Virus record (IMG/VR): IMGVR_UViG_3300043570_001980
Location: 124,001-188,000 of that record
Length of the DNA: 64,000 nt
Strand: one strand, 5' to 3'
The position numbers and the translations under genes were made by a program. This document shows positions 1,694-15,476 of this stretch, one piece after another (within the stretch, counting starts at the first letter, position 1; every line of letters begins with the position of its first letter). The notes under the pieces were generated by a model, which saw only the letters and a list, made by a program, of their open reading frames with translations, had not been told where the DNA came from and did no database searches.

Positions 1694-1783
1694 GGAGCGG
1701 TGGCCGAACGGTAAGGCAGCGGATTGCTAATCCGTACAACGTGTTAAAGCGTTGACTGGGTTCGACTCCCAGTCGCTCCGCCA
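1694..1783 (+). tRNA. tRNA-Ser(GCT)
   Basis: Cloverleaf, long variable arm, anticodon loop TT-GCT-AA, CCA end. Confidence 0.95.
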
Positions 1784-1789
1784 AGTTTT

Positions 1790-1854
1790 GAGAGTCACAT
1801 CGCCTGGATACTTCCTTTGGTAACAAAGCACTAGGTCCTGCAACCGTGGCTCTC
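1790..1854 (+). ncRNA. Unidentified small structured RNA B
   Basis: Nested stems GAGAGTCAC/GTGGCTCTC, CCTGG/CTAGG and CTTTG-GTAA-CAAAG (GNRA loop) between two tRNAs. Confidence 0.5.
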
Positions 1855-1862
1855 CCTTATTT

Positions 1863-1937
1863 GCTCGATTCGTCTATCGGTTAGGACATGCGGTTTTCAT
1901 CCGCATAAGAGCGGTTCGACTCCGCTATCGAGTACCA
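1863..1937 (+). tRNA. tRNA-Glu(TTC)
   Basis: Cloverleaf, TGCGG-TT-TTC-AT-CCGCA, CCA. Confidence 0.95.
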
Positions 1938-1942
1938 GACAT

Positions 1943-2028
1943 GGAGATGTGGCCGAGTGGCTGAAGGCGGCAGACTGTAAATCTGTTCTGTAAAAAGCGC
2001 GGTGGTTCGAATCCATCCATCTCCACCA
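1943..2028 (+). tRNA. tRNA-Tyr(GTA)
   Basis: Cloverleaf with variable arm, CT-GTA-AA loop, CCA. Confidence 0.95.
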
Positions 2029-2030
2029 GA

Positions 2031-2222
2031 ACGTTCCGGATTAGTCTCTGGATACTGTGACCCACAGGATGAGAAGTAGTGTGACAACTACGGGTGGTAG
2101 TCTTTAAACCCAAAGGCCGCTGGCAATGCGATAACGGTTCCTGTCGGGAAGCGGGTGGAAGGAGTGTGTGATGGGTATGATAGCGTCATATCTTGATACT
2201 CTATAATTACCGCCGGGGGATG
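2031..2222 (+). ncRNA. Unidentified structured RNA C (~190 nt)
   Basis: GC-rich, no credible ORF; helices TTCCGG/CCGGGG, CTGTG/CACAG, GTAGT/ACTAC, GGTGGTAG/TTACCGCC, GGAGTGT/ATACTCT. Confidence 0.55.
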
Positions 2223-2318
2223 CAGAGCATTTTTAAGTACATACCCTACGCCTACTTGGAATAGGAGATAGTGTCCATAGCACTGAAGAAAGGTTTAAAT
2301 GTACTTAAAAATGTTTTG
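2223..2318 (+). ncRNA. Unidentified structured RNA D closed by a 20-bp stem
   Basis: 2223-2242 pairs with 2299-2318; two internal hairpins with complementary loops (TGG/CCA). Confidence 0.5.
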
Positions 2319-2471
2319 TTTTTATAGTCAAGCATCGATAAGGTATCGTGTATGGACGCATACACTATTCGGGTCACAGCGGCCGGCGACTGATCCTGAT
2401 ATAACTGCATCGGCTTTGACACGGAAGCACCGGACGTCTAAATTGGCATTCTCGGTGCTTGACTATAAAAA
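2319..2471 (+). ncRNA. Unidentified structured RNA E closed by a 20-bp stem
   Basis: 2319-2338 pairs with 2452-2471; GTGTATG-GACG-CATACAC hairpin whose loop can pair with downstream CGTC. Confidence 0.6.
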
Positions 2472-2474
2472 TTT

Positions 2475-2550
2475 GGTCTTAAAGTGTTCATGGACGCACG
2501 ACGGCTTGTCACGCCGTAAGAGTGGGGATCGTTACCCCCTAAGACCGCCA
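2475..2550 (+). tRNA. tRNA-Asp(GTC)
   Basis: Cloverleaf, TT-GTC-AC loop, atypical T-loop ATCGTTA, CCA. Confidence 0.9.
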
Positions 2551-2572
2551 ACATAAAAACTCTAACTTTTAC

Positions 2573-2647
2573 CGCGGGGTACGTCAGTGGTAGACCGCCA
2601 GGCTCATAACCTGGAAGCCGGAGGTTCGAGTCCTTCCCCCGCAACCA
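2573..2647 (+). tRNA. Initiator tRNA-fMet(CAT)
   Basis: C1-A72 mismatch, CGCGGGG 5' end, CT-CAT-AA loop, CCA. Confidence 0.92.
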
Positions 2648-2655
2648 ACACAGGA

Positions 2656-2675
2656 GTGTTGTATAAATACAACAC
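2656..2675. promoter_or_regulatory. Palindromic operator-like site GTGTTGTA-TAAA-TACAACAC
   Basis: Perfect 8-bp inverted repeat upstream of the promoter at 2695. Confidence 0.6.
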
Positions 2676-2694
2676 AAAATTTTTACCTTAGAGG

Positions 2695-2723
2695 TTGACT
2701 CTAAGACATAAATAAAGTACAAT
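2695..2723 (+). promoter_or_regulatory. Sigma70 promoter for leader 2 / tRNA block 2
   Basis: TTGACT-17 nt-TACAAT; the -35 box sits inside the inverted repeat CTTAGAG/CTCTAAG. Confidence 0.8.
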
Positions 2724-2733
2724 AGAAACTAAG

Positions 2734-2865
2734 ATGAACAAGCATTTCACATTATCGTTGAAACCCATTATGCACCAGACAGCATCTGCCTGGTCACGCG
2801 GTTTTAATTTTAACTGTGGGATTACAATTCCAGGTACGCAGGGGTCCGTAGGAGACAAGATGTAA
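2734..2865 (+). CDS. Putative attenuator leader peptide 2 (43 aa, MNKHFTLSLKPIMHQTASAWSRGFNFNCGITIPGTQGSVGDKM)
   Basis: ATG near the predicted start site; GGGGTCC (2841-2847) is complementary to terminator arm GGACCCC (2889-2895); the stop codon lies inside the alternative hairpin. Confidence 0.6.
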   Translation: MNKHFTLSLKPIMHQTASAWSRGFNFNCGITIPGTQGSVGDKM

Positions 2866-2888
2866 TAAAAATACATCAAATTCTAAAA

Positions 2889-2924
2889 GGACCCCAGGAC
2901 TAAAAACCCTGGGGTTTTGTTTTT
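2889..2924 (+). terminator. Intrinsic terminator (attenuator 2)
   Basis: GGACCCCAGG-loop-CCTGGGGTTT followed by a T tract. Confidence 0.85.
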
Positions 2925-2933
2925 AAGGAACAA

Positions 2934-3119
2934 ATGATTAGAGAAGAAAGTAAAACTGAACATAAGTGTGTTTACACAGAAATTGATCAAAGAGCCAACG
3001 AAGGACTAGGGTACGCACTCACTCCCGAGATGACAAAAAAATTGATTGAAGGTAAATTCACAAGAATGCAACTGCTAACAGGCAATCGAAATAGAGTGAT
3101 TGAAACTAGCAAAGCATAA
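2934..3119 (+). CDS. Hypothetical protein (61 aa)
   Basis: AAGGA Shine-Dalgarno before ATG; first gene after attenuator 2. Confidence 0.6.
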   Translation: MIREESKTEHKCVYTEIDQRANEGLGYALTPEMTKKLIEGKFTRMQLLTGNRNRVIETSKA

Positions 3120-3293
3120 AGTGTGCATAGGCAACGCGAGCCTGACCTGCACTTAAAACATGGGCAAATGGGCGGCCTGTAGGATGAAGCTTCTTTTGTG
3201 AAGTGAAAAATTACAGCGTATTAAAGCATTCTTTAAGAACAGGCAGCCTAAGTATTTTAGAGTGCTTTAATACATACATTCCTCGGAGTGTGT
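3119..3293 (+). ncRNA. Structured intergenic RNA F including a 15-bp processing-type stem
   Basis: GTGCA/TGCAC, AGGC/GCCT and CTGTA/TACAG helices; 3218-3232 pairs with 3259-3273. Confidence 0.4.
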
Positions 3294-3305
3294 TAACTAT
3301 TTTAT

Positions 3306-3381
3306 TCCTTGATAGCTCAGTTGGTAGAGCACTTGACTGTTAATCAAGTTGTCCCTGGTTCGAGCCCAGGTCGAGGAGCCA
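3306..3381 (+). tRNA. tRNA-Asn(GTT)
   Basis: Cloverleaf, CT-GTT-AA, CCA. Confidence 0.95.
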
Positions 3382-3387
3382 GATATA

Positions 3388-3463
<76 letters not shown>

Positions 3464-3468
3464 TTTAT

Positions 3469-3545
3469 ACCACCTTAGCTCATTTGGATAGAGCACCAGG
3501 CTACGAACTTGGGGGTAGGGCGTTCAACTCGCTCAGGTGGTACCA
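3469..3545 (+). tRNA. tRNA-Arg(ACG)
   Basis: Cloverleaf, CT-ACG-AA, CCA. Confidence 0.92.
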
Positions 3546-3551
3546 GTTTTT

Positions 3552-3626
3552 GGGGGATTGGTATAGTTGGGAACACAGTAGCTTTGCAAGCTTCAGTCAG
3601 CGGTTCGACCCCGCTATCCTCCACCA
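3552..3626 (+). tRNA. tRNA-Ala(TGC)
   Basis: G3-U70 pair, TT-TGC-AA, CCA. Confidence 0.93.
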
Positions 3627-3679
3627 ACAAATTTTTAAGGAGAGTCCAAATGGACAGTGATAAGAGTGGTAAGATTTGT

Positions 3680-3755
3680 GGGACGTTAGCTCAGTTGGTA
3701 GAGCAGTAGACTTTTAATCTATTGGTCATTGGTTCGAATCCAATACGTCCTACCA
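3680..3755 (+). tRNA. tRNA-Lys(TTT)
   Basis: Cloverleaf, CT-TTT-AA, CCA. Confidence 0.95.
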
Positions 3756-3872
3756 TATAAAAGCATTCTTGGCGTAAGTCAAAGCGGGAGAAGAAGCTGA
3801 GTATCTGCAGATGCAAAAGTTTCAGCAACTAGATTGCCTCCTAGGCCTGCTGTTGAGAGTGCCTCTATATGG
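3753..3872 (+). ncRNA. Unidentified structured RNA G closed by a ~22-bp stem
   Basis: CCATATAAAAGCATTCTTGGCG pairs with TGTTGAGAGTGCCTCTATATGG; internal GCTGA/TCAGC and CTAG/CTAG helices. Confidence 0.5.
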
Positions 3873-3946
3873 TAATATAGCATAGTGGCTAATGCAGTTG
3901 CTTCATACGCAACCTATCGTTGGTTCGAGTCCAACTATTACCACCA
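3871..3946 (+). tRNA. tRNA-Met(CAT), elongator (Ile2 not excluded)
   Basis: Fully paired acceptor stem, TT-CAT-AC, CCA. Confidence 0.85.
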
Positions 3947-3954
3947 GGCTTTGT

Positions 3955-4031
3955 TGGAGATTCGCCAAGTTGGTCAAGGCATCGGATTTTGATTCCGACA
4001 CGCATAGGTTCGAATCCTATATCTCCTGCCA
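3955..4031 (+). tRNA. tRNA-Gln(TTG)
   Basis: Cloverleaf, unpaired 1-72, TT-TTG-AT, CCA. Confidence 0.93.
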
Positions 4032-4037
4032 GATTTT

Positions 4038-4112
4038 AGCCGTGTAGCTCAGAGGAAGAGCATTGTCTTGATAAGGCAAGGGTCGACATTTCGAAACTGT
4101 CCATGGCTACCA
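4038..4112 (+). tRNA. tRNA-Ile(GAT)
   Basis: Cloverleaf, TT-GAT-AA, atypical T-stem, CCA. Confidence 0.88.
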
Positions 4113-4130
4113 ATATAAGTAAATTACAAT

Positions 4131-4204
4131 GCGGGGTTCGTATAGTGGTAATACCTGAGCCTTCCAAGCTCATGCGGAGAGTTCGATTCTCTTACCCCGC
4201 TCCA
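4131..4204 (+). tRNA. tRNA-Gly(TCC)
   Basis: Cloverleaf, CT-TCC-AA, U73, CCA. Confidence 0.95.
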
Positions 4205-4210
4205 GGTTTA

Positions 4211-4285
4211 GGGTGATTAGCTCAGCGGTAGAGTCGCTGCCTTACACGCAGTTTGTCGGGAGTTCGATCCTCTCATCACCCACCA
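4211..4285 (+). tRNA. tRNA-Val(TAC)
   Basis: Cloverleaf, CT-TAC-AC, CCA. Confidence 0.95.
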
Positions 4286-4291
4286 GTTATT

Positions 4292-4368
4292 CGGAGTGTA
4301 GCACAGCCTGGTAGTGCGCCTGGTTTGGGACCAGGAGGTCGTAGGTTCGAATCCTACTATTCCGACCA
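4292..4368 (+). tRNA. tRNA-Pro(TGG)
   Basis: Cloverleaf, TT-TGG-GA, CCA. Confidence 0.95.
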
Positions 4369-4373
4369 ATTAT

Positions 4374-4451
4374 GCAACGGTGGCAGAGTGGTCAAATGCA
4401 ACGGATTGCAAATCCGTAAAGTCGTGAGTTCAAATCTCACCCGTTGTTCCA
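4374..4451 (+). tRNA. tRNA-Cys(GCA)
   Basis: Cloverleaf, TT-GCA-AA, U73, CCA. Confidence 0.93.
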
Positions 4452-4455
4452 ATTT

Positions 4456-4529
4456 GTATCCATAGTGTAATGGCAGCATTGCGGTCTCCAAAACCGTCAG
4501 TCTAGGTTCAAGTCCTAGTGGGTACGCCA
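4456..4529 (+). tRNA. tRNA-Trp(CCA)
   Basis: Cloverleaf, CT-CCA-AA, CCA end. Confidence 0.93.
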
Positions 4530-4551
4530 GTATTAAATATAAGAAAGCCAT

Positions 4552-4989
4552 ATGATAAAAGAAACACAAACAAGAACAATAGTAAAAGCAGTTATATACA
4601 GATTTTTCTCAGTGGTAGCTATCATGTTGTTATCACTGCTATTCGGCGCTAGCATGGCATCGGCTGGCATAGTCGGACTAATTGTAATTGTGGTAGGTAC
4701 AGCAATTTATTACGTACATGACAGGTTGTGGTTGCTTACTGGATGGGCAAGAAACGATTCAGGGGTTGACGATATCAAACGTAGTGTAATTAAAACCATT
4801 ATCTATCGTGCAATCACCATGACGGTTTCTTACTTGATTGCAATATTCATTATTAAAAGCAGTGGGTCCAACGCTGTGCTATTTGCAATAGCACAGGCAT
4901 TGACAAATATGACTTTTTTCTTTATTGTTGAGAGAGTATTTAATTTTATTGAATGGGGAAAAATTAAACCTGAATCTCAGGTAAATTAA
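4552..4989 (+). CDS. Membrane protein with two DUF2061-like repeats
   Basis: Tandem RTIVKAVIYR...YYVHDRLW and RSVIKTIIYR...FFIVERVFNFIEWG units. Confidence 0.75.
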   Translation: MIKETQTRTIVKAVIYRFFSVVAIMLLSLLFGASMASAGIVGLIVIVVGTAIYYVHDRLWLLTGWARNDSGVDDIKRSVIKTIIYRAITMTVSYLIAIFIIKSSGSNAVLFAIAQALTNMTFFFIVERVFNFIEWGKIKPESQVN

Positions 4990-4992
4990 TTA

Positions 4993-5084
4993 GGAAGCGT
5001 GGTCGAGTCAGGTTTATGGCAACAGTCTTGAAAACTGTCGGCTCTTAACAGGGTCCGTGAGTTCGAATCTCACCGCTTCCACCA
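4993..5084 (+). tRNA. tRNA-Ser(TGA)
   Basis: Long variable arm, CT-TGA-AA, CCA. Confidence 0.95.
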
Positions 5085-5098
5085 AATTGGAGTATTCA

Positions 5099-5383
5099 AT
5101 GTCAAACGAAACCGATAAATTCAAACATAGCAAGCGTCTACAGAAAGACAAAAACGCTGTTAACAAACAAATCAAAATTGCCAAAGAATTTGGGATACCA
5201 GTTGAAGAGCCACATAAGTTTGCCAAACATCATGCCATGAACTGTGGCACCCCAAATTGTGTGATGTGCAGTAATCCTAGAAAAACCTTTAAAGAGTTGA
5301 CACAGCAAGAGAAACGAATGTTTCAGGACACCGATACTCCTCGTGATCGACACAGCAATGGATTGCCGCCTGATCAAGATTAA
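5099..5383 (+). CDS. Hypothetical basic phage protein with a C-x4-C-x2-C motif
   Basis: GGAG SD then ATG at 5099; HAMNCGTPNCVMCSNPR. Confidence 0.75.
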   Translation: MSNETDKFKHSKRLQKDKNAVNKQIKIAKEFGIPVEEPHKFAKHHAMNCGTPNCVMCSNPRKTFKELTQQEKRMFQDTDTPRDRHSNGLPPDQD

Positions 5384-5388
5384 TCTAT

Positions 5389-5464
5389 GGTGACTATAGT
5401 GTAACGGTCAACACCACGGATTGTGATTCCGTTAATATGGGTTCGATTCCCATTAGTTACCCCA
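5389..5464 (+). tRNA. tRNA-His(GTG)
   Basis: G-1:C73 pair, TT-GTG-AT, CCA. Confidence 0.95.
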
Positions 5465-5466
5465 AT

Positions 5467-5542
5467 GCCAAGATAGCTCAGTTGGTAGAGCACCGGACTG
5501 AAAATCCGGGTGTGGGCGGTTCGATCCCGTCTCTTGGTACCA
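5467..5542 (+). tRNA. tRNA-Phe(GAA)
   Basis: Cloverleaf, CT-GAA-AA, CCA. Confidence 0.95.
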
Positions 5543-5543
5543 A

Positions 5544-6008
5544 TTACTGAGTGATCTGGCCTGTTACAGCATCTACATGCACAGGTTGGCGACCATCAAA
5601 TGTAAAATCATAAAAAGGATTTCCTCGATAATCAACAGTTTGACGCAACCTGCAAAACAGCCAGGTGTCTGTAATACCTGCTTTGGTCATGGCCTGCTGT
5701 GCCTGATTACAACTCAGGGTAGGTGGATATACAAATGCCTGACACTCAGCCACACGGGAGTCATCAAACGTGGGGCCAGTAGCATGTCCTGTAATGTCAA
5801 CAGTTATAGCATAAGGTTTGGTATCTTCGGATCCTTGCCAGCAGGTATACATAGTTCCATTACGGTCAGCCTCAGCAAGATAAAATTTAGATCCGTTTTG
5901 ATGTAGATCCATAAGGCTCTTGGCTCCCCAGATCTGTTGATCAAAACTCAAGGGAGACAACAACCCTAGTCGTCGAAAATATTGTCTTATAAGTGTTATT
6001 ATTGACAT
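5544..6008 (-). CDS. Hypothetical protein with a PepSY-like C-terminus, inserted antisense in the tRNA array
   Basis: AAGGA SD, TAAATA upstream; C-terminus ...VHVDAVTGQI. Confidence 0.7.
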   Translation of the reverse strand: MSIITLIRQYFRRLGLLSPLSFDQQIWGAKSLMDLHQNGSKFYLAEADRNGTMYTCWQGSEDTKPYAITVDITGHATGPTFDDSRVAECQAFVYPPTLSCNQAQQAMTKAGITDTWLFCRLRQTVDYRGNPFYDFTFDGRQPVHVDAVTGQITQ

Positions 6009-6034
6009 AATTACATTTCCTTTTGTTGATATAT

Positions 6035-6238
6035 TTATCTGGTTAGAATAGCGGCCTTTAGAGGTTCGATTCCGTCTCTTGGTACCAACAATGGATCAGG
6101 AATAAACTTAGGTTTGGATGTATTCAACAGTGGGTCAGGAACAAATACACGATGTGTACTATGGTAAGTTGGAGAAATATAAGACTGTTTTGCCGATTTC
6201 TCATACAATATGTCAGTAGATGTGTTACAATCAATCAT
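6035..6238 (-). CDS. Hypothetical protein (67 aa) with a F(V/I)PDPLL repeat
   Basis: TAAATA-cagt-ATG context; C-terminus reads antisense through the duplicated tRNA-Phe 3' end. Confidence 0.45.
   Translation of the reverse strand: MIDCNTSTDILYEKSAKQSYISPTYHSTHRVFVPDPLLNTSKPKFIPDPLLVPRDGIEPLKAAILTR
6063..6088 (+). repeat. Direct repeat of the tRNA-Phe 3' end (att-like scar)
   Basis: GGTTCGATTCCGTCTCTTGGTACCAA matches 5518-5543 at 25/26 positions. Confidence 0.85.
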
Positions 6239-6250
6239 ACTGTATTTAAA

Positions 6251-6327
6251 GCCCCGGTGACGGAATTGGTATACGTGTTGGTCTTAGAAGCCAAATTTTA
6301 GGAGTTCGAGTCTCCTCTGGGGCACCA
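6251..6327 (+). tRNA. tRNA-Leu(TAG), short variable loop
   Basis: CT-TAG-AA loop, Leu-type D arm, A73, 77 nt only. Confidence 0.88.
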
Positions 6328-6360
6328 ATTTAGCATATATAATAGAACAAAGGAAGCATC

Positions 6361-7140
6361 ATGAAGAGACTTTTTGTAATGCTTGTATTACTTGTTAGCA
6401 TACCCTCTTATGCATTTCCTAGCAATTCAAGCATTCTGGTATTGGATGTAAATTCCAACCACCCACGATATGTACATAATGGCGAGCAAGTTCGTTCTAT
6501 TGCCAGCATTACTAAATTAATGACTGCAATGGTAACCCTTGACTACGATAAAGATCTAAGTAGAAAACTTTTGCTCAGTAATCGTGTCACGAGCAGTTTA
6601 CCTAAACAATATTATACCAGACACGAGCTGTTAAATGCAATGTTGGTTCGCAGTGATAATGCCGCTGCCGAAACCATTGCTGAAGATTATCCTGGCGGTA
6701 GACACGCATTTGTTAAACAAATGAACCTACATGCCAAAATGTGGGATATGAACAATACTGCATTTATTGATCCAACTGGCCTGGGCGTGTTCAATGTCAG
6801 CACAGTATATGATGTGGCCAACATGATACAAACAGCATCCAGTTATTGGTTTATCAGAGAAACATCAGTTAAAAAGAATGTTGCCATTGCTACCCTAGCC
6901 AAAAAGAAAACACGAACTGTAAATTTAAACAATACCAATCAATCACTGTTATTTAAATTTGACAATATTGTAATCAGCAAAACTGGTCTTACCAGTGCCG
7001 CCGGTTGGTGTATGAGTTTGTTTGTAACGGAAAAAGACAAAGACTACATAATTGTAGTACTAGGAAGTAAAAACAAAAACGAAAGAACAGCTACAGTAAA
7101 GGACATCATGTATAGCCATGTACTTGATCCCAACTCGTAA
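6361..7140 (+). CDS. D-alanyl-D-alanine endo/carboxypeptidase (peptidase S11, PbpG/DacA-like)
   Basis: Signal peptide; SxxK (ASITK), SxN (SDN) and KTG motifs. Confidence 0.9.
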   Translation: MKRLFVMLVLLVSIPSYAFPSNSSILVLDVNSNHPRYVHNGEQVRSIASITKLMTAMVTLDYDKDLSRKLLLSNRVTSSLPKQYYTRHELLNAMLVRSDNAAAETIAEDYPGGRHAFVKQMNLHAKMWDMNNTAFIDPTGLGVFNVSTVYDVANMIQTASSYWFIRETSVKKNVAIATLAKKKTRTVNLNNTNQSLLFKFDNIVISKTGLTSAAGWCMSLFVTEKDKDYIIVVLGSKNKNERTATVKDIMYSHVLDPNS

Positions 7141-7151
7141 CCAAGGTAACC

Positions 7152-7622
7152 ATGAAAAAAATCAATCTAGAAGAAGTCAAGAGCTTTATTGAAGCACAAG
7201 GGCCAGATACTAAAATTTATCTAGGCTGTGACTCTGAACGTATGCGCATTGATGGTCAATGGCATGCTGACTATGTCTTGGCTGTTGTTGTACACATCAA
7301 CGGAAATAACGGTTGCAAGTTATTTGGTGAAGTACAACGTGAACGTGATTACGATCACAAAGTCCATAGGCCAGCAATGCGCCTTATGTCCGAAGTGTAT
7401 AAGGTCAGCGAGTTGTACCTAAAGCTAGCAGATGTACTTGAAGGTAGACAGGTTGAAGTACACTTAGACATTAACCCCGATGATCAATATGGATCTAGCT
7501 GTGTTATCAGCCAGGCCATTGGCTATATCAAAGGAACATGTAATGTTGTACCGTTTGTTAAACCCGATGCATTTGCTGCCAGCTATGCTGCCGATCGTTT
7601 CAAAAGTTTGAAAGTAGCCTAA
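7152..7622 (+). CDS. RNase H-like YkuK family protein
   Basis: KIYLGCDS...RLMSEV...EVHLDIN...KPDAFAASYAADR pattern. Confidence 0.75.
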   Translation: MKKINLEEVKSFIEAQGPDTKIYLGCDSERMRIDGQWHADYVLAVVVHINGNNGCKLFGEVQRERDYDHKVHRPAMRLMSEVYKVSELYLKLADVLEGRQVEVHLDINPDDQYGSSCVISQAIGYIKGTCNVVPFVKPDAFAASYAADRFKSLKVA

Positions 7623-7624
7623 GA

Positions 7625-7777
7625 ATGCCAATGTACGAAACCACTGTTAGAACACCGCAAGGTGAAGAGAAGAAAAGAATATATGCACAGGACGTAAAAG
7701 AAGCCAAAAAGCTTTTTGAACAACTGTATGGTGGACCAAGAGCAGTTCCGTACATTCCACATATGGTGCCAAGTTGA
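7625..7777 (+). CDS. Hypothetical protein (50 aa, not in the ORF track)
   Basis: MPMYETTVRTPQGEEKKRIYAQDVKEAKKLFEQLYGGPRAVPYIPHMVPS fills the gap between the YkuK gene and tRNA-Gly. Confidence 0.65.
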   Translation: MPMYETTVRTPQGEEKKRIYAQDVKEAKKLFEQLYGGPRAVPYIPHMVPS

Positions 7778-7778
7778 T

Positions 7779-7852
7779 GCGGGTATGGTGTAATGGTAAC
7801 CCGAAACCTTGCCAAGGTTTAGTTGAGAGTTCGATTCTCTCTGTCCGCTCCA
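7779..7852 (+). tRNA. tRNA-Gly(GCC)
   Basis: Cloverleaf, TT-GCC-AA, U73, CCA. Confidence 0.92.
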
Positions 7853-8544
7853 AGCTTCATTGACAATCGTTCAGCAAAAACTCGATGCCTGTCAATGCCC
7901 GGATGGCAAAGGTCTCTACCAAGTGAATTAGAGTAGCTTGATGTGAGTGCGTTAGCATTAACTGTAACACACTTGATTCCTTTGGCAGTACACAGCATTT
8001 GTATACCTAATGTATTTTTTTCAGTGTTGAAATAATTGTTATTTTCGTCTACTGTCCAAAGTTTAATAAACTCTTTTGTTGATGGATCTTCAATATCTAC
8101 ATTTTTAATATTATCGTTGGTTACCAGTTCACATCTTATGCCCGGAGGTTGCATAAAAATAACTGTGGTTGGATTAATTTTATCTAGCCATCCATGACAT
8201 AACCTAAATGCTGTATCAGCGGAGGAGCCGGCAATGCCAAGATTAACACATTGTAAATTTAGATTTGTTGATACTAACTCAGGCCAAATTAAGTCTACAG
8301 GTAACCCCATGCCCATTGTAAAACTACACCCAAGAAACATGATACTAGGTTTGTCAGTAAACTCTTTACACCTAAACCCATGTGAGTTAAATTCATATGT
8401 AAAGTGATTATCTATCCAGCCCTGTAGTACTAGATCACCGTGGCGTTTGTCAAGATTTTTCTTGTATAATTCTTCAGTGTCCATGGGCAACCAGTCTACA
8501 GTTTTGTTAGCAAGATTTTTATAAAAGGAATCATAATTAGGCAT
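7819..8544 (-). CDS. SGNH/GDSL-like hypothetical protein, antisense in the tRNA array
   Basis: FLGCSFTMG, NLGIAGSS and DLCHPG motifs; last codons overlap tRNA-Gly. Confidence 0.7.
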   Translation of the reverse strand: MPNYDSFYKNLANKTVDWLPMDTEELYKKNLDKRHGDLVLQGWIDNHFTYEFNSHGFRCKEFTDKPSIMFLGCSFTMGMGLPVDLIWPELVSTNLNLQCVNLGIAGSSADTAFRLCHGWLDKINPTTVIFMQPPGIRCELVTNDNIKNVDIEDPSTKEFIKLWTVDENNNYFNTEKNTLGIQMLCTAKGIKCVTVNANALTSSYSNSLGRDLCHPGIDRHRVFAERLSMKLGADRENRTLN

Positions 8545-8585
8545 GTTTTTATTTACACTAAAACTTTATCAATATTACAAATTCT

Positions 8586-8659
8586 GCTCTCATAGTATAA
8601 TGGCATTACACGCCCTTGGTAAGGGCGAAACACAAGTTCAATTCTTGTTGAGAGCACCA
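8586..8659 (+). tRNA. tRNA-Thr(GGT)
   Basis: Cloverleaf, TT-GGT-AA, CCA. Confidence 0.92.
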
Positions 8660-8662
8660 TAT

Positions 8663-8737
8663 CGGCCCTTGGTGAAATGGATATCATTCCAGGCTTCGAA
8701 CCTGGAGGTGGGAGTTCGATCCTCTCAGGGCCGGCCA
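8663..8737 (+). tRNA. tRNA-Arg(TCG)
   Basis: Cloverleaf, CCAGG-CT-TCG-AA-CCTGG, CCA. Confidence 0.9.
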
Positions 8738-10405: not shown

Positions 10406-10654
10406 ATGGCAAGAATTACATCAGAAGATGCAGTAGAACAAGTTGGTAATCGATTTGATCTTGTGCTAATTGCAAGTCGCAGAGTTAGAGAACTTCGCAA
10501 CGGCTATCGCTCTCACATTGCTTCCACAAATGGAGCATTGGTTACTGCTCTTAAGGAAATTGAAACAGGACATGTGGGTAGAGAGTATTTGTTAAAACCT
10601 ACAGAAGTGAAAAATCCCGACCGTCGACCCAGACGTTCAGACAAAGTTTTTTAA
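10406..10654 (+). CDS. rpoZ: RNA polymerase omega subunit
   Basis: MARITSEDAVEQVGNRFDLVLIASRRVREL...ALKEI is the omega signature; AAGGA SD. Confidence 0.93.
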   Translation: MARITSEDAVEQVGNRFDLVLIASRRVRELRNGYRSHIASTNGALVTALKEIETGHVGREYLLKPTEVKNPDRRPRRSDKVF

Positions 10655-11518: not shown

Positions 11519-11956
11519 ATGAAAGAAAAATTTATTCAAGCCTACATGGATGTTGCTAAAACATTTGCAGAACTCAGCCATGCTCGTAGATTACATGTGG
11601 GTGCTATTGTGGTCAAGGATGATAGAATTATCAGTATTGGCTACAATGGCATGCCTGCTGGTTGGGATAACAACTGTGAAGATGAGATTTGGGATAAAAC
11701 TGGTGATTATGAATTGAAAACAAAGCCAGAAGTACTTCACGCAGAAACCAACGCCATTGCAAAATTAGCCAAGAGCACAGAAAGCGGAGACGGTGCTGAT
11801 TTGTTTGTTACTCATGCTCCGTGCATTGAATGTGCCAAACTGATTTATCAATCCGGCATACGCAGAGTATTTTATGGCAAAGCATACCGAGATGATTCAG
11901 GCATAAAGTTTTTAGAGAAATCAGGAGTAACAGTCAATAAAACTGTTGACGTATAA
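11519..11956 (+). CDS. dCMP deaminase
   Basis: GYNG, HAE and PCxxC zinc motifs. Confidence 0.92.
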   Translation: MKEKFIQAYMDVAKTFAELSHARRLHVGAIVVKDDRIISIGYNGMPAGWDNNCEDEIWDKTGDYELKTKPEVLHAETNAIAKLAKSTESGDGADLFVTHAPCIECAKLIYQSGIRRVFYGKAYRDDSGIKFLEKSGVTVNKTVDV

Positions 11957-11964
11957 TCAATAAG

Positions 11965-12036
11965 TAAGAGTTATTGCTGTATGAAGCAAAGAGAAAAGTG
12001 TTCTGGACGGGGGTGCGAATCCCCCCAGGTCCACCA
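11965..12036 (+). ncRNA. ssrA: Two-piece (permuted) tmRNA, acceptor piece (5' end approximate)
   Basis: GGAC-GGGGG-TGCGAAT-CCCCC-CAGGTCC-A-CCA; pairs with downstream GGGCCTG giving G3-U70. Confidence 0.92.
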
Positions 12037-12047
12037 AAAGGATTTTT

Positions 12048-12173
12048 ATGTTTGAGAATTGGCATTGGGTTTATATGTGGGGCATCTTAGTTGTAGTCAA
12101 CTATATGTTTTGGATTATAAAAAGTCTTTTTGATGGGCCTGACCTAGATTCGACAGGGCAACAAGTAAATTAG
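12048..12173 (+). CDS. Putative 41-aa membrane micropeptide starting in the tmRNA intervening segment
   Basis: AAGGA SD 6 nt before ATG; MFENWHWVYMWGILVVVNYMFWIIKSLFDGPDLDSTGQQVN. Confidence 0.45.
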   Translation: MFENWHWVYMWGILVVVNYMFWIIKSLFDGPDLDSTGQQVN

Positions 12174-12316
12174 TGGACAGCTCGGCAATGCAGAAGCCGT
12201 AGGACAGGGGTAACCCGGTTGTAGAAGCAAAAAAAGTAAACGCAAACGACTCACAGTTCGCATTGGCAGCTTGATAAAAGCCGTCTAGGGTAAGACATAC
12301 CTCGTAACAGAAACTC
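12135..12316 (+). ncRNA. ssrA: Two-piece (permuted) tmRNA, coding piece; tag ANDSQFALAA
   Basis: GGGCCTGACCTAGATTCGAC 5' end; resume codon GCA at 12242; tandem stops TGA TAA at 12272-12277. Confidence 0.93.
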
Positions 12317-12317
12317 A

Positions 12318-12344
12318 GAGACCCGCTTCGGCGGGTTTTCTTTT
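12318..12344 (+). terminator. Intrinsic terminator after tmRNA
   Basis: GAGACCCGC-TTCG-GCGGGTTTT plus T tract. Confidence 0.9.
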
Positions 12345-12440
12345 GACCAAAATACCCCAAATTTTAATTGATGTTACCACAAACTCTAATACATAGTAGC
12401 GAATGATTTAAAGCTCATTCTCTTTTTAAGGAAAACAAAA

Positions 12441-14370: not shown

Positions 14371-14540
14371 GACCAGGTTATTTCAGTTTATAAATAATTT
14401 TGCAACGCCGGCAGGGCCGACGTCAGATCAAATCGACGCTTGACATAGTGATGTCTTTACTGTTATACTATAACAGAACGCCTACTGTAAGTGGAATTCT
14501 TTCACAAGCATTACAATTCAACTTTTTAAGGAAATATTAC

Positions 14541-15476
14541 ATGATTAAAAAATCATTATCATTTTGTTTTGGTTTATTGCTGTGCGCACTTTCAATGTCC
14601 AGCATGGCTAACCAGCCGCCCAAAGAAATCAAAATTATGGTGCAGTACTCCGCAGGCGGAAGTGCTGACCGTGTTGCTCGTGTGATTGAGTCAGCTATTG
14701 ACAAAAATCGATATCGAGTTCAAATTGAATACAAACTGGGAGCAGGTGGCGGGATTGCCCACGCTCACATGGCCACGCTAAAAACTCCAGGGGAAACTGT
14801 ACTGTTGGTTGCCGGACCTTCTTTGGTTAGTTTGCCTATTTTAAATCCAAGCACCAACGCTTATGATCCAAGCACGGATTTTGTTACTGTAGCGCATCTA
14901 GGAACAGAGCCTTCAGTAATAGTGGTTAATTCTCAAACTGGAATAAAGAATTGGCAGGACTTTGTGACCTATACCAAAACTAGAGAGGTAAACTACGGAA
15001 GCTCAGGGCTCGGTGGTGCTGGGCATACTATATCAGCATTGGTTGCTGGCGACAAAAAAAACTTTGTTCATATACCGTACAAAGGTCCTGCTATAGCAGA
15101 TCTTTTGGGAGGCCAATTAACTTATCTTAACGAATCCGCAATGTTGCTTGATCAGCACATCAGCTCTGGCAAACTAGTGCCTGTGGCTGTGGGTAGTCCT
15201 GCTAGAGTAGACGCTTTTAAAAATGTTCCTACCCTTCAAGAACTCAAAATCAACGATCATCAATACTACAGATGGTCATTGTTAATAGCCAATCGAGGAG
15301 CCGATCCTGAAGTTTTACAACATGTCAGGACCGTAGCCAGTTCTGCAGAAGTTCAACGTGAGTTAAAATCTCTATACATGGCACCTGCAAAAGACTTTTC
15401 CCCAGCTGAGTTCTTAAAAGAAGAGAAGAGAAAATTCTTAATTATTTCTAAACAGCTTAATTTACCAATTCAATGA
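14541..15476 (+). CDS. Bug/TctC tripartite tricarboxylate transporter substrate-binding protein
   Basis: AAGGA SD, signal peptide; YSAGGSADRVAR, GAGGGIA, YGSSGLG, HIPYKG, VPTLQE motifs. Confidence 0.9.
   Translation: MIKKSLSFCFGLLLCALSMSSMANQPPKEIKIMVQYSAGGSADRVARVIESAIDKNRYRVQIEYKLGAGGGIAHAHMATLKTPGETVLLVAGPSLVSLPILNPSTNAYDPSTDFVTVAHLGTEPSVIVVNSQTGIKNWQDFVTYTKTREVNYGSSGLGGAGHTISALVAGDKKNFVHIPYKGPAIADLLGGQLTYLNESAMLLDQHISSGKLVPVAVGSPARVDAFKNVPTLQELKINDHQYYRWSLLIANRGADPEVLQHVRTVASSAEVQRELKSLYMAPAKDFSPAEFLKEEKRKFLIISKQLNLPIQ

What the first reader, a model, noticed from the sequence alone, without database searches (positions are those of the whole stretch)
12037..12173. tmRNA intervening segment encodes a Trp-rich membrane micropeptide that runs into the tmRNA 5' end
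Seen: the 98-nt spacer is closed by AAAAGGATTTTTAT/ATAAAAAGTCTTTT, which sequesters an AAGGA SD and the ATG of a 41-codon ORF (MFENWHWVYMWGILVVVNYMFWIIKSLF-DGPDLDSTGQQVN; one predicted TM helix, 4 Trp). Its stop lies inside the coding piece. Inference: translation and tmRNA maturation are mutually exclusive. After processing, the excised spacer would be a non-stop mRNA and so a substrate of tmRNA itself, a possible feedback loop or toxin-like peptide.
Basis: partly seen in the sequence, partly recalled or inferred. Interest (0 to 1): 0.7.

Follow-up and report, generated by a model that had tools for sequence, protein, structure and literature searches.

The report
Small protein gene inside phage tmRNA spacer
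The piece of RNA that is cut out when this lake phage's two-piece tmRNA matures carries a real, conserved gene for a tiny membrane peptide, and related phages use the same spot as a plug-in site for about 28 unrelated small genes, which I did not find reported for tmRNA genes.

Summary
The window is part of a 342-kb lake phage. It holds a circularly permuted tmRNA gene with a 98-nt intervening sequence (IVS, 12037-12134). The IVS is closed by a stem that buries an AAGGA ribosome-binding site and the ATG of a 41-codon ORF (12048-12173), which ends inside the coding piece.

One such ORF in 98 nt is not significant by itself (7.5% of shuffles). Comparison makes the case:
- The peptide recurs in more than 15 variants, in the IVS of divergent phage tmRNAs.
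- It is under purifying selection: 26 of 54 changes are synonymous against 16% expected (p=6e-8; pN/pS 0.22).
- In some phages the same gene sits just upstream of the tmRNA with its own stop.

The IVS is a general slot. In an unbiased sample, 19 of 43 long IVSs have a ribosome-binding site, a start codon and an IVS-filling ORF. The antisense strand gives 0 and shuffles give 0.6. About 28 unrelated ORF families occupy the slot, including GNAT, CxxCxxCC and HNH proteins.

The closing stem covaries and also exists in ORF-free IVSs, so it is primarily a tmRNA element. Bacterial relatives are too short to hold such an ORF.

Translation itself has not been shown.

The parts
11952..11957 (+). TATAAT, a candidate -10 box of the tmRNA precursor promoter (inferred)
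   Evidence: It aligns with the UAuAAU consensus at the 5' end of the Rfam beta_tmRNA model. RNA-library contigs begin at 11969-11972. The simple sigma-70 scan found no full promoter.
11975..12036 (+). Acceptor piece of the two-piece tmRNA (3' half of the tRNA-like domain, T-arm, ends in CCA)
   Evidence: RF04321 alignment starts at 11975. CCA lies at 12034-12036. ARAGORN calls a permuted tmRNA here.
12037..12134 (+). Intervening sequence (IVS), 98 nt, absent from the mature tmRNA
   Evidence: It lies between the CCA end and the GGGCCUG 5' end of the coding piece.
12036..12049 (+). 5' arm of the closing stem; contains the ribosome-binding site and the first two bases of the ATG
   Evidence: Present in the MFE folds. 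Across 93 unique arm pairs, cognate arms pair at -10.2 kcal/mol against -4.9 for non-cognate arms.
12038..12042 (+). AAGGA Shine-Dalgarno motif, 5 nt upstream of the ATG
   Evidence: Read from the sequence. An SD-like motif in the IVS head is associated with ORF presence, Fisher p=2.6e-12.
12048..12173 (+). 41-codon ORF. Codons 1-28 are the conserved hydrophobic core. Codons 30-41 read through the 5' end of the coding piece.
   Evidence: ORF listed. Homologues. Purifying selection. Transmembrane segment at residues 8-24.
12117..12130 (+). 3' arm of the closing stem; also encodes the last core residues of the peptide (I-K-S-L-F)
12135..12341 (+). Coding piece of the tmRNA. 12135-12141 is the 5' strand of the acceptor stem, with the G3:U pair.
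   Evidence: Rfam RF01850 alignment runs to 12341. ARAGORN.
12242..12277 (+). Tag reading frame ANDSQFALAA followed by two stop codons
   Evidence: ARAGORN places the coding part at 299-334 within the gene. Confirmed by reading the sequence.
12320..12344 (+). Terminal G+C-rich hairpin followed by a T run (terminator of the precursor)
   Evidence: Read from the sequence. It matches the last helix of the RF01850 model. The simple terminator scan did not list it.

Best explanation
The 98-nt IVS of this phage's permuted tmRNA gene contains a genuine small-protein gene. Its conserved core is about 28 residues, Trp-rich, with one transmembrane helix.

The gene sits in a stereotyped expression slot:
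- A Shine-Dalgarno AAGGA lies directly after the CCA end of the acceptor piece.
- The start codon lies at about +12.
- The ORF fills the whole loop.

The slot is bounded by a covarying closing stem that extends the tmRNA acceptor stem. The stem exists whether or not an ORF is present, so it is primarily a tmRNA folding or processing element. In ORF-bearing IVSs its 5' arm doubles as the ribosome-binding site and its 3' arm carries the last codons or the stop.

Related lake phages fill the same slot with about 28 unrelated ORFs of 23-151 aa. These are exchanged by recombination between nearly identical tmRNA genes. The IVS therefore works as a gene-cassette site that borrows tmRNA transcription.

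Inferred steps:
1. The ribosome-binding site is free only on the nascent precursor, before the 3' arm is made about 80 nt later, or when the stem breathes.
2. A ribosome in the ORF keeps the closing and acceptor stems open.
3. When the ribosome leaves, the stem forms. Initiation is then blocked and the precursor is cut at the CCA end and at the tRNA-like 5' end.

The peptide itself is most likely a membrane-acting accessory protein, not a tmRNA-specific factor. Its read-through into the coding piece is most likely a consequence of reading frame.
For: Shown by tool results.

(1) Anatomy of the locus.

(2) The peptide family:
- Five DNA variants in IVSs among the first loci.
- Eight proteins from the word-indexed search.
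- Nineteen representatives at E<=0.001 from the exhaustive search, of which about 12 short proteins belong to the family; the longer multi-stretch hits look like unrelated Trp-rich repeats.
- The family occurs in IVSs of tmRNAs with quite different T-arms.

(3) Purifying selection:
- Four phylogenetically independent pairs give 26 synonymous of 54 changes, against 16.4% expected (binomial p=6e-8).
- pN/pS is 0.22, and changes by codon position are 16/9/29.
- Other IVS ORF families give omega of 0.06-0.3.

(4) The same gene, about 93% identical in DNA (by eye), lies immediately upstream of the acceptor piece with its own TAA stop in L266-L271. In L270 the IVS holds a different 56-aa ORF.

(5) The slot is general:
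- In 43 unique IVSs of 84 nt or more, taken from a scan that did not look at the IVS, 19 have a ribosome-binding site, a start within +30, and an ORF covering at least 75% of the rest.
- The antisense strand gives 0, and shuffles give a mean of 0.61 and a maximum of 4.
- The association between ribosome-binding site and ORF has Fisher p=2.6e-12.
- There are 31 blastp families, about 28 of them credible.
- GNAT and CxxCxxCC domains score over the Pfam cut-offs, and HNH falls just under.

(6) The closing stem covaries, with cognate arms at -10.2 against -4.9 kcal/mol (p=1e-40). It is also present in ORF-free IVSs.

(7) Cassette exchange:
- tmRNAs 90-94% identical to the window's in their mature parts carry unrelated IVSs.
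- An identical IVS sits in tmRNAs that are only 90-92% identical.

(8) The bacterial beta-type two-piece tmRNA genes found are only 325-345 nt in all, against 422 nt here, so their IVSs must be far shorter than a 98-nt ORF-bearing one.

(9) Lake metatranscriptome contigs contain the peptide ORF joined to the acceptor piece in the upstream arrangement.
Against: - There is no direct evidence of translation (no Ribo-seq or mass spectrometry).
- There is no direct evidence of processing at 12036/12037 and 12134/12135 for this phage.
- The RNA contigs that cover the ORF come from the upstream arrangement, not from the IVS arrangement. Contigs cannot exclude DNA carry-over, and their break points follow sequence conservation.
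- The last five core residues (K-S-L-F-D) are encoded by the stem's 3' arm, so their conservation may be an RNA constraint.
- The single-sequence statistics are not significant.
- The co-transcriptional gating model is inference only.
- The peptide matches no family in Pfam, PHROGs, PADLOC or the Atlas, so its function is a guess from composition.
Confidence: 0.75

Rival explanations
1. After the precursor is processed, the excised IVS is a non-stop mRNA. Ribosomes stall at its 3' end and are rescued by tmRNA, and the peptide is tagged and degraded. The peptide would then accumulate only from unprocessed precursor, or when trans-translation is saturated. That would couple peptide level to tmRNA activity.
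For: - In the window and in every IVS-borne member of its family, no in-frame stop precedes the coding-piece 5' end. Tails run 12-39 nt or more into the coding piece.
- The conserved TGA of the 3' arm is read in another frame.
Against: - Most other slot families terminate inside the IVS.
- The upstream copies of the same gene have their own stop.
- The tails are not conserved in sequence, length or frame. The L030 subgroup enters the coding piece in a different frame.
- No in-frame stop could be placed in the last codons without changing the closing stem, so the run-on may simply be constrained.
- No cleavage or tagging data exist.
Confidence: 0.15
2. The peptide is a type-I-toxin-like or holin-like membrane-damaging peptide. 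Its translation is kept very low by the 5'-3' fold-back stem, as in hok mRNA. The phage would use it to depolarise or permeabilise the host at a set time.
For: - The peptide is small and hydrophobic, with a single transmembrane segment.
- The ribosome-binding site and ATG are buried in a long-range stem.
- About a third of the slot ORFs are similar short hydrophobic peptides: L037, L010, L115, L080, L073, L101, L121.
Against: - No antisense RNA or antitoxin feature was looked for or seen.
- The stem also exists in ORF-free IVSs, so it did not evolve to silence a toxin.
- The slot also holds soluble proteins such as GNAT and Zn-binding proteins.
- There is no homology to any toxin or holin family.
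Confidence: 0.2
3. The ORF is not translated. The IVS is conserved only as RNA (processing stem plus internal hairpins), and the open frame is incidental.
For: - An ORF of this length arises in 7.5% of shuffles.
- Antisense frames are open in 16 of 43 IVSs.
- No translation data exist.
- In the closest known analogue, the Coxiella 23S rRNA IVS, the abstract says results suggest the encoded S23p protein is not made (PMC4990558, abstract seen).
Against: - There is a synonymous excess and a third-position bias across independent pairs.
- The frame is kept open at more than 50% nucleotide divergence, with conserved W5, N18 and Y19.
- The same ORF is kept intact with its own stop outside the IVS.
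- The combination of ribosome-binding site and start is found 19 times in the sense strand against 0 in the antisense.
- Pfam domains occur in sister cassettes.
Confidence: 0.05

Closest known systems
Circularly permuted (two-piece) tmRNA genes of the beta-proteobacterial type (Rfam RF01850 / RF04321; Keiler 2000 and Sharkady & Williams 2004, as cited in PMC9004378; database paper PMC11915505)
   Same: The gene order is acceptor piece - IVS - coding piece. Other shared features are the CCA end, the G3:U pair, the ALAA tag, the terminal hairpin, and scores over both Rfam cut-offs.
   Different: The bacterial genes found are 325-345 nt in all, so their IVSs are much shorter. The 2025 tmRNA database paper reports only a tRNA-Ala gene and a repetitive element as unusual IVS contents, and no ORF. 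Here the IVS holds a translatable, conserved gene.
23S rRNA intervening sequences that carry an ORF (S23p; Coxiella burnetii and Leptospira; PMC4990558)
   Same: A stable-RNA gene is interrupted by a stem-closed IVS that carries a protein ORF.
   Different: This is a different RNA (tmRNA) in a phage. Many unrelated ORFs share one slot rather than one S23p family, and none matches Pfam S23p. The ORFs here carry a good ribosome-binding site and show purifying selection, whereas the abstract of PMC4990558 suggests that Coxiella S23p is not made.
Group I introns with homing-endonuclease genes in the T-loop of tmRNA genes (PMC11915505)
   Same: A protein gene is nested in a tmRNA gene and removed from the mature RNA. 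One relative (L048) has an HNH-like ORF in the IVS.
   Different: There is no intron fold and no splicing, because the IVS is simply the gap of a permuted gene. The cargo is mostly not endonucleases.
arfA regulation by trans-translation (PMC10107115)
   Same: An ORF whose stop codon is lost when the RNA is cut at a hairpin would be a tmRNA substrate.
   Different: This is only a formal analogy. Cleavage and tagging are not shown, and the property is not shared by most slot ORFs.
Fold-back inhibition of hok-type type I toxin mRNAs; tRNA clusters with interspersed small ORFs in T4-like phages (my own background knowledge, not tested here)
   Same: A small hydrophobic peptide has its ribosome-binding site paired to the 3' end of its own message. 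Small ORFs are co-transcribed with stable RNAs and released by tRNA-processing enzymes.
   Different: No antisense partner is known here. The ORF lies inside one stable-RNA gene, not between genes.

Membership tests
Two-piece (permuted) tmRNA gene, beta type | Score over the curated Rfam cut-offs, and a permuted call by ARAGORN | tested here: met
   RF04321 scores 118.1 against 47 bits and RF01850 scores 102 against 84 bits. ARAGORN reports tmRNA*.
Two-piece (permuted) tmRNA gene, beta type | Acceptor stem with a G3:U pair, CCA end, T-arm, and a tag frame ending in ALAA plus a stop | tested here: met
   GGGCCUG pairs with CAGGUCC, followed by ACCA. The tag ANDSQFALAA lies at 12242-12271 with stops at 12272-12277.
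Two-piece (permuted) tmRNA gene, beta type | The precursor is cut into two RNAs and the IVS is discarded | tested here: inconclusive
   In RNA-library contigs both pieces are far deeper than the IVS region. However, depths sum over many relatives, and contig ends follow sequence conservation.
Genuine protein-coding small gene | Ribosome-binding site at proper spacing, a start codon, and an open frame kept in relatives | tested here: met
   AAGGA lies 5 nt before the ATG. The frame is kept open in more than 15 variants.
Genuine protein-coding small gene | Purifying selection at the protein level | tested here: met
   26 of 54 changes are synonymous against 16% expected, p=6e-8, and pN/pS is 0.22.
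Genuine protein-coding small gene | Direct evidence of translation | not testable with these tools
   No Ribo-seq or proteomics data exist for this uncultured phage.
rRNA-type IVS with S23p ORF | The ORF product belongs to the S23p / 23S rRNA IVS protein family | tested here: not met
   No Pfam hit for the window peptide or for 19 other IVS products, apart from GNAT, CxxCxxCC and HNH.
rRNA-type IVS with S23p ORF | The IVS is closed by a conserved stem that could be an RNase III substrate | tested here: met
   The closing stem covaries and is coaxial with the acceptor stem. The enzyme that cuts it is not known.
Type I toxin (hok-like) | Small hydrophobic peptide with its ribosome-binding site sequestered by 5'-3' pairing | tested here: met
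   (in silico only).
Type I toxin (hok-like) | Cognate antisense RNA, and demonstrated toxicity | not tested
   No antisense promoter was searched for specifically. Toxicity needs an experiment.
arfA-like non-stop regulation | No in-frame stop before an RNA cleavage site | tested here: met
   The stop at 12171-12173 lies 37 nt beyond the 12134/12135 junction. The same holds in all IVS-borne family members.
arfA-like non-stop regulation | Cleavage occurs in vivo and the product is tmRNA-tagged | not testable with these tools
   This would need infected cells or a surrogate host.

The most novel reading that the evidence does not exclude
The IVS of phage two-piece tmRNA genes is a dedicated, translation-gated expression slot. 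A pioneer ribosome on the nascent precursor decides when the acceptor stem can form, and so when the phage tmRNA matures. In the window's family the processed IVS is a non-stop message, so the level of the membrane peptide reports how much trans-translation capacity is left, in an arfA-like circuit built into the tmRNA gene itself.
Probability: 0.15. Interest if true: 0.85.

Novelty: new variant of a known kind. Interest (0 to 1): 0.7.

Why it matters
tmRNA genes are treated as pure RNA genes, and the IVS of permuted forms is treated as disposable filler. Three things follow from this result.

First, in a large group of uncultured lake phages the filler is coding. It is under selection and is swapped like a cassette. 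Gene callers and tmRNA annotators will hide each other's features here, so both kinds of annotation need to allow for the overlap.

Second, the ribosome-binding site is part of the RNA-processing stem. That gives a compact natural system for studying competition between translation and stable-RNA maturation on one transcript.

Third, the slot collects small phage accessory proteins (membrane peptides, a GNAT, Zn-binding proteins) of unknown function. These are candidates for host take-over or anti-defence factors.

I found no report of ORFs in tmRNA IVSs in the literature that could be searched.

Tried and rejected
Single-sequence tests
- Shuffle test of the ORF: not significant, p about 0.075.
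- Fold z-score of the IVS: -0.87, not significant.
- Counting open frames alone is uninformative. Antisense frames are open in 16 of 43 IVSs, so I replaced it with the test requiring a ribosome-binding site, a start and an ORF.

Searches that found nothing
- Cultured phage genomes (INPHARED): no relative of this tmRNA, only two short weak hits.
- Pfam, PHROGs, PADLOC and ESM Atlas: no family for the peptide.
- SmpB: not found in the 342-kb phage.
- A second copy of the peptide gene in the phage: not found.
- The consensus promoter scan found nothing upstream, and the terminator scan missed the terminal hairpin.

RNA evidence
- I hoped to see the precursor or the excised IVS in metatranscriptomes.
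- The contigs that cover the ORF turned out to come from relatives with the upstream arrangement.
- They show that the gene family occurs in RNA libraries, but nothing about processing of the IVS form.

Other
- The genome-contig scan mostly returned one-piece tmRNAs of Thermomicrobiales. Only a few Rhodocyclaceae-type two-piece genes served as controls.
- One genome search failed on a parameter.
- No structure or complex prediction was run. A 41-aa helix would not be informative.

Full report
WHAT IS THERE

The window is bases 124001-188000 of a 342-kb viral contig from lake water, rated 95% complete. Downstream of 25 tRNA genes lies a circularly permuted tmRNA gene.
- ARAGORN calls it at 11944-12365 on the + strand, with tag ANDSQFALAA.
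- Rfam RF04321 scores 118 bits and RF01850 scores 102 bits, both over their cut-offs.
- The acceptor piece ends with CCA at 12034-12036.
- The coding piece begins with GGGCCUG at 12135. This pairs with CAGGUCC and includes the G3:U pair.

- AAGGA lies at 12038-12042, the ATG at 12048, and the TAG at 12171-12173, which gives 41 codons.
- The peptide has 4 Trp. Its best hydrophobic segment is residues 8-24, Kyte-Doolittle mean 1.91.
- The closing stem 12036-12049 / 12117-12130 forms in every fold and stacks on the acceptor stem.
- The ribosome-binding site has a predicted unpaired probability of about 0, both in the precursor and in the excised IVS.

IS IT MORE THAN CHANCE?

Not on its own. An ORF that fills a 98-nt A+T-rich stretch appears in 7.5% of shuffles. 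The fold energy is ordinary (z = -0.87). Antisense frames are open in 16 of 43 comparable IVSs. Everything that follows therefore rests on comparison with relatives.

RELATIVES

I scanned IMG/VR with a pattern from the T-arm only, so the scan was blind to IVS content. It returned 119 loci, of which about 95 hold permuted tmRNAs. Their IVSs range from 4 to 594 nt.

Long IVSs very often begin, straight after CCA, with (T/A)AAGGA, then 5-7 nt, then ATG, and carry an ORF that fills the loop.
- Among the 43 unique IVSs of 84 nt or more, 19 have a ribosome-binding site, a start within +30, and an ORF covering at least 75% of the rest.
- The antisense strand gives 0. Shuffles give a mean of 0.61 and a maximum of 4.
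- An SD-like motif in the first 12 nt is associated with an ORF. The counts are 20 / 2 / 4 / 49, Fisher p = 2.6e-12. Three of the four apparent exceptions do hold ORFs that fell outside the scoring rule, either starting further in or covering only half of the IVS.

A second scan, biased because it required AAGGA, added 53 more loci. Together, 74 loci carry IVS ORFs led by a ribosome-binding site. These fall into 31 blastp families, about 28 of them credible, ranging from 23 to 151 aa.
- One is a GNAT acetyltransferase and one a CxxCxxCC protein, both over their Pfam cut-offs. One is HNH-like, just below the cut-off.
- About a third are short hydrophobic peptides.
- About 12 families stop at the conserved TGA that ends 1 nt before the coding piece.
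- About 10 families stop just before the 3' arm.
- Three families, including the window's, run on into the coding piece.

THE WINDOW'S PEPTIDE IS A REAL GENE

Identical or variant copies occupy the IVS in many contigs.
- Loci L102, L122, L123, L146, L159 and L165 carry identical copies. Variants are in L133, L038, L030 and L083.
- Protein searches added P0002-P0008 and P0009-P0020.
- Some variants sit in tmRNAs whose T-arms are quite different (L307-L310).

The core is conserved. M1, W5 and N18 are invariant, and Y19 and F28 nearly so. The tails beyond the coding-piece junction differ in length, sequence and even reading frame.

The core is under purifying selection.
- Four independent pairs give 26 synonymous changes out of 54, against 16.4% expected (p = 6e-8).
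- pN/pS is 0.22.
- Changes by codon position are 16/9/29.
- Sister cassette families show omega of 0.06-0.3.

The decisive observation is a second arrangement. In L266-L269 and L270-L271 the same gene, about 93% identical in DNA (by eye), lies immediately upstream of the acceptor piece. There it ends ...NVKE with its own TAA stop. L270's IVS holds a different 56-aa ORF. Contigs from lake RNA libraries join this upstream copy to the acceptor piece.

THE STEM AND THE SLOT

Across 93 unique arm pairs, each 5' arm pairs much better with its own 3' arm than with others (-10.2 against -4.9 kcal/mol, p = 1e-40). The cognate arm ranks in the best 10% for 71% of IVSs. The stem is also present in ORF-free IVSs. 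It therefore belongs to the tmRNA precursor, and the ORFs have adapted to it: the 5' arm serves as the ribosome-binding site and the 3' arm holds the last codons or the stop.

The IVS content is exchanged by recombination.
- tmRNAs that are 90-94% identical to the window's in their mature parts carry no ORF or unrelated ORFs (L071, L115, L138).
- A 100% identical IVS sits in tmRNAs that are only 90-92% identical (L122, L165).

The bacterial beta-type two-piece tmRNA genes found (Thauera, Azonexus and other Rhodocyclaceae-type genomes) are only 325-345 nt in total, against 422 nt here, so their IVSs must be far shorter than an ORF-bearing one.

MECHANISM

Shown:
- The gene is real.
- The slot is general.
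- The stem is structural.
- The stem buries the ribosome-binding site.

Inferred:
1. Initiation is possible mainly on the nascent precursor, before the 3' arm is transcribed.
2. A translating or terminating ribosome must hold the closing stem and the acceptor-stem 5' strand open, so translation and maturation exclude each other on one molecule.
3. After the ribosome leaves, the stem forms, initiation stops, and the precursor is cut.

The peptide's function is unknown. From its composition it is a single-pass membrane peptide. It is not tmRNA-specific, because it also works from the upstream position.

I give it about 0.15.

COMPARISON WITH WHAT IS KNOWN

The 2025 tmRNA database paper notes only a tRNA-Ala gene and a repetitive element as unusual IVS contents (PMC11915505). 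Phage two-piece tmRNAs are known, for example Melnitz (PMC9004378), but no ORF in the IVS is reported.

The nearest precedents are 23S rRNA IVSs that carry the S23p ORF (PMC4990558) and homing-endonuclease genes in tmRNA group I introns. I therefore class this as a new variant of a known kind: a protein gene nested in a removed segment of a stable-RNA gene. What is new is its occurrence in tmRNA, as a multi-family cassette slot, with the ribosome-binding site built into the processing stem.

LIMITS

- The phages are uncultured.
- There are no translation or end-mapping data.
- The samples are not phylogenetically independent beyond the pairs I chose.
- Part of the locus set is biased by the AAGGA pattern. 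The statistics quoted use only the unbiased set.

Noticed in passing
window 1694-8737: A cluster of 25 tRNA genes on the + strand covers nearly all amino acids. This is typical of jumbo phages.
   Followed up: no
window 10406-10654: An 82-aa ORF matches the RNA polymerase omega / Rpb6 family (PF01192, 44 bits). As far as I know, a phage-encoded omega subunit is unusual.
   Followed up: partly
window 14400-15476: A 358-aa ORF matches the TctC/Bug family of periplasmic solute receptors (PF03401, 109 bits). It is an auxiliary metabolic gene, and from my own knowledge the family is especially common in beta-proteobacteria, which may hint at the host.
   Followed up: partly
whole phage record G000: No SmpB gene was found in the 342-kb phage, so its tmRNA would have to use the host's SmpB.
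   Followed up: yes
L132:3185-3517 (-), L022:2967-3227 (-), L048:2271-2726 (-): IVS cassettes in relatives encode a GNAT acetyltransferase, a CxxCxxCC Zn/Fe-binding protein and an HNH-like endonuclease. A GNAT inside a tmRNA gene is intriguing, because from my own knowledge some GNAT toxins acetylate charged tRNAs.
   Followed up: partly
L053, L166, L132, L145, L129 (IVS ORFs starting at +24): Five otherwise unrelated IVS ORF families share a longer leader and an N-terminus of the form M-R/Q-I-x-E/D-I/L. The L125 family starts earlier, at about +10, but has the same motif after a doubled Met. The shared N-terminus may mark the recombination junction of the cassettes.
   Followed up: no
L025, L144, L148, L163 (115-nt IVS): These IVSs begin almost like the window's (AAAGGATTTTTAT; L025 has AAAAGATTTTTAT) but have ATC where the window has ATG, and they have no long ORF. 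They may be decayed cassettes.
   Followed up: no
P0011, P0013; L046, L105, L114, L014: In some relatives a frame that starts in the IVS stays open through the whole coding piece and ends in the tmRNA tag frame itself (...ALAA), so a precursor-derived product would carry a built-in degradation tag. In P0011 and P0013 the frame belongs to a member of the window's peptide family. In the four loci it starts at a conserved ATG with no ribosome-binding site and may not be a gene. This could be coincidence.
   Followed up: no
L266:2860-2994: A 44-aa, very basic ORF lies directly upstream of the peptide gene and the tmRNA in the phages with the upstream arrangement. The RNA-library contigs extend into it.
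   Followed up: no
L189 / G003 contig C90: A 404-nt permuted tmRNA of the phage type (tag ANDEQFALAA) sits on a contig binned into a Haliscomenobacter MAG, which also has its own tmRNA-like match elsewhere. This is probably a mis-binned phage contig.
   Followed up: partly
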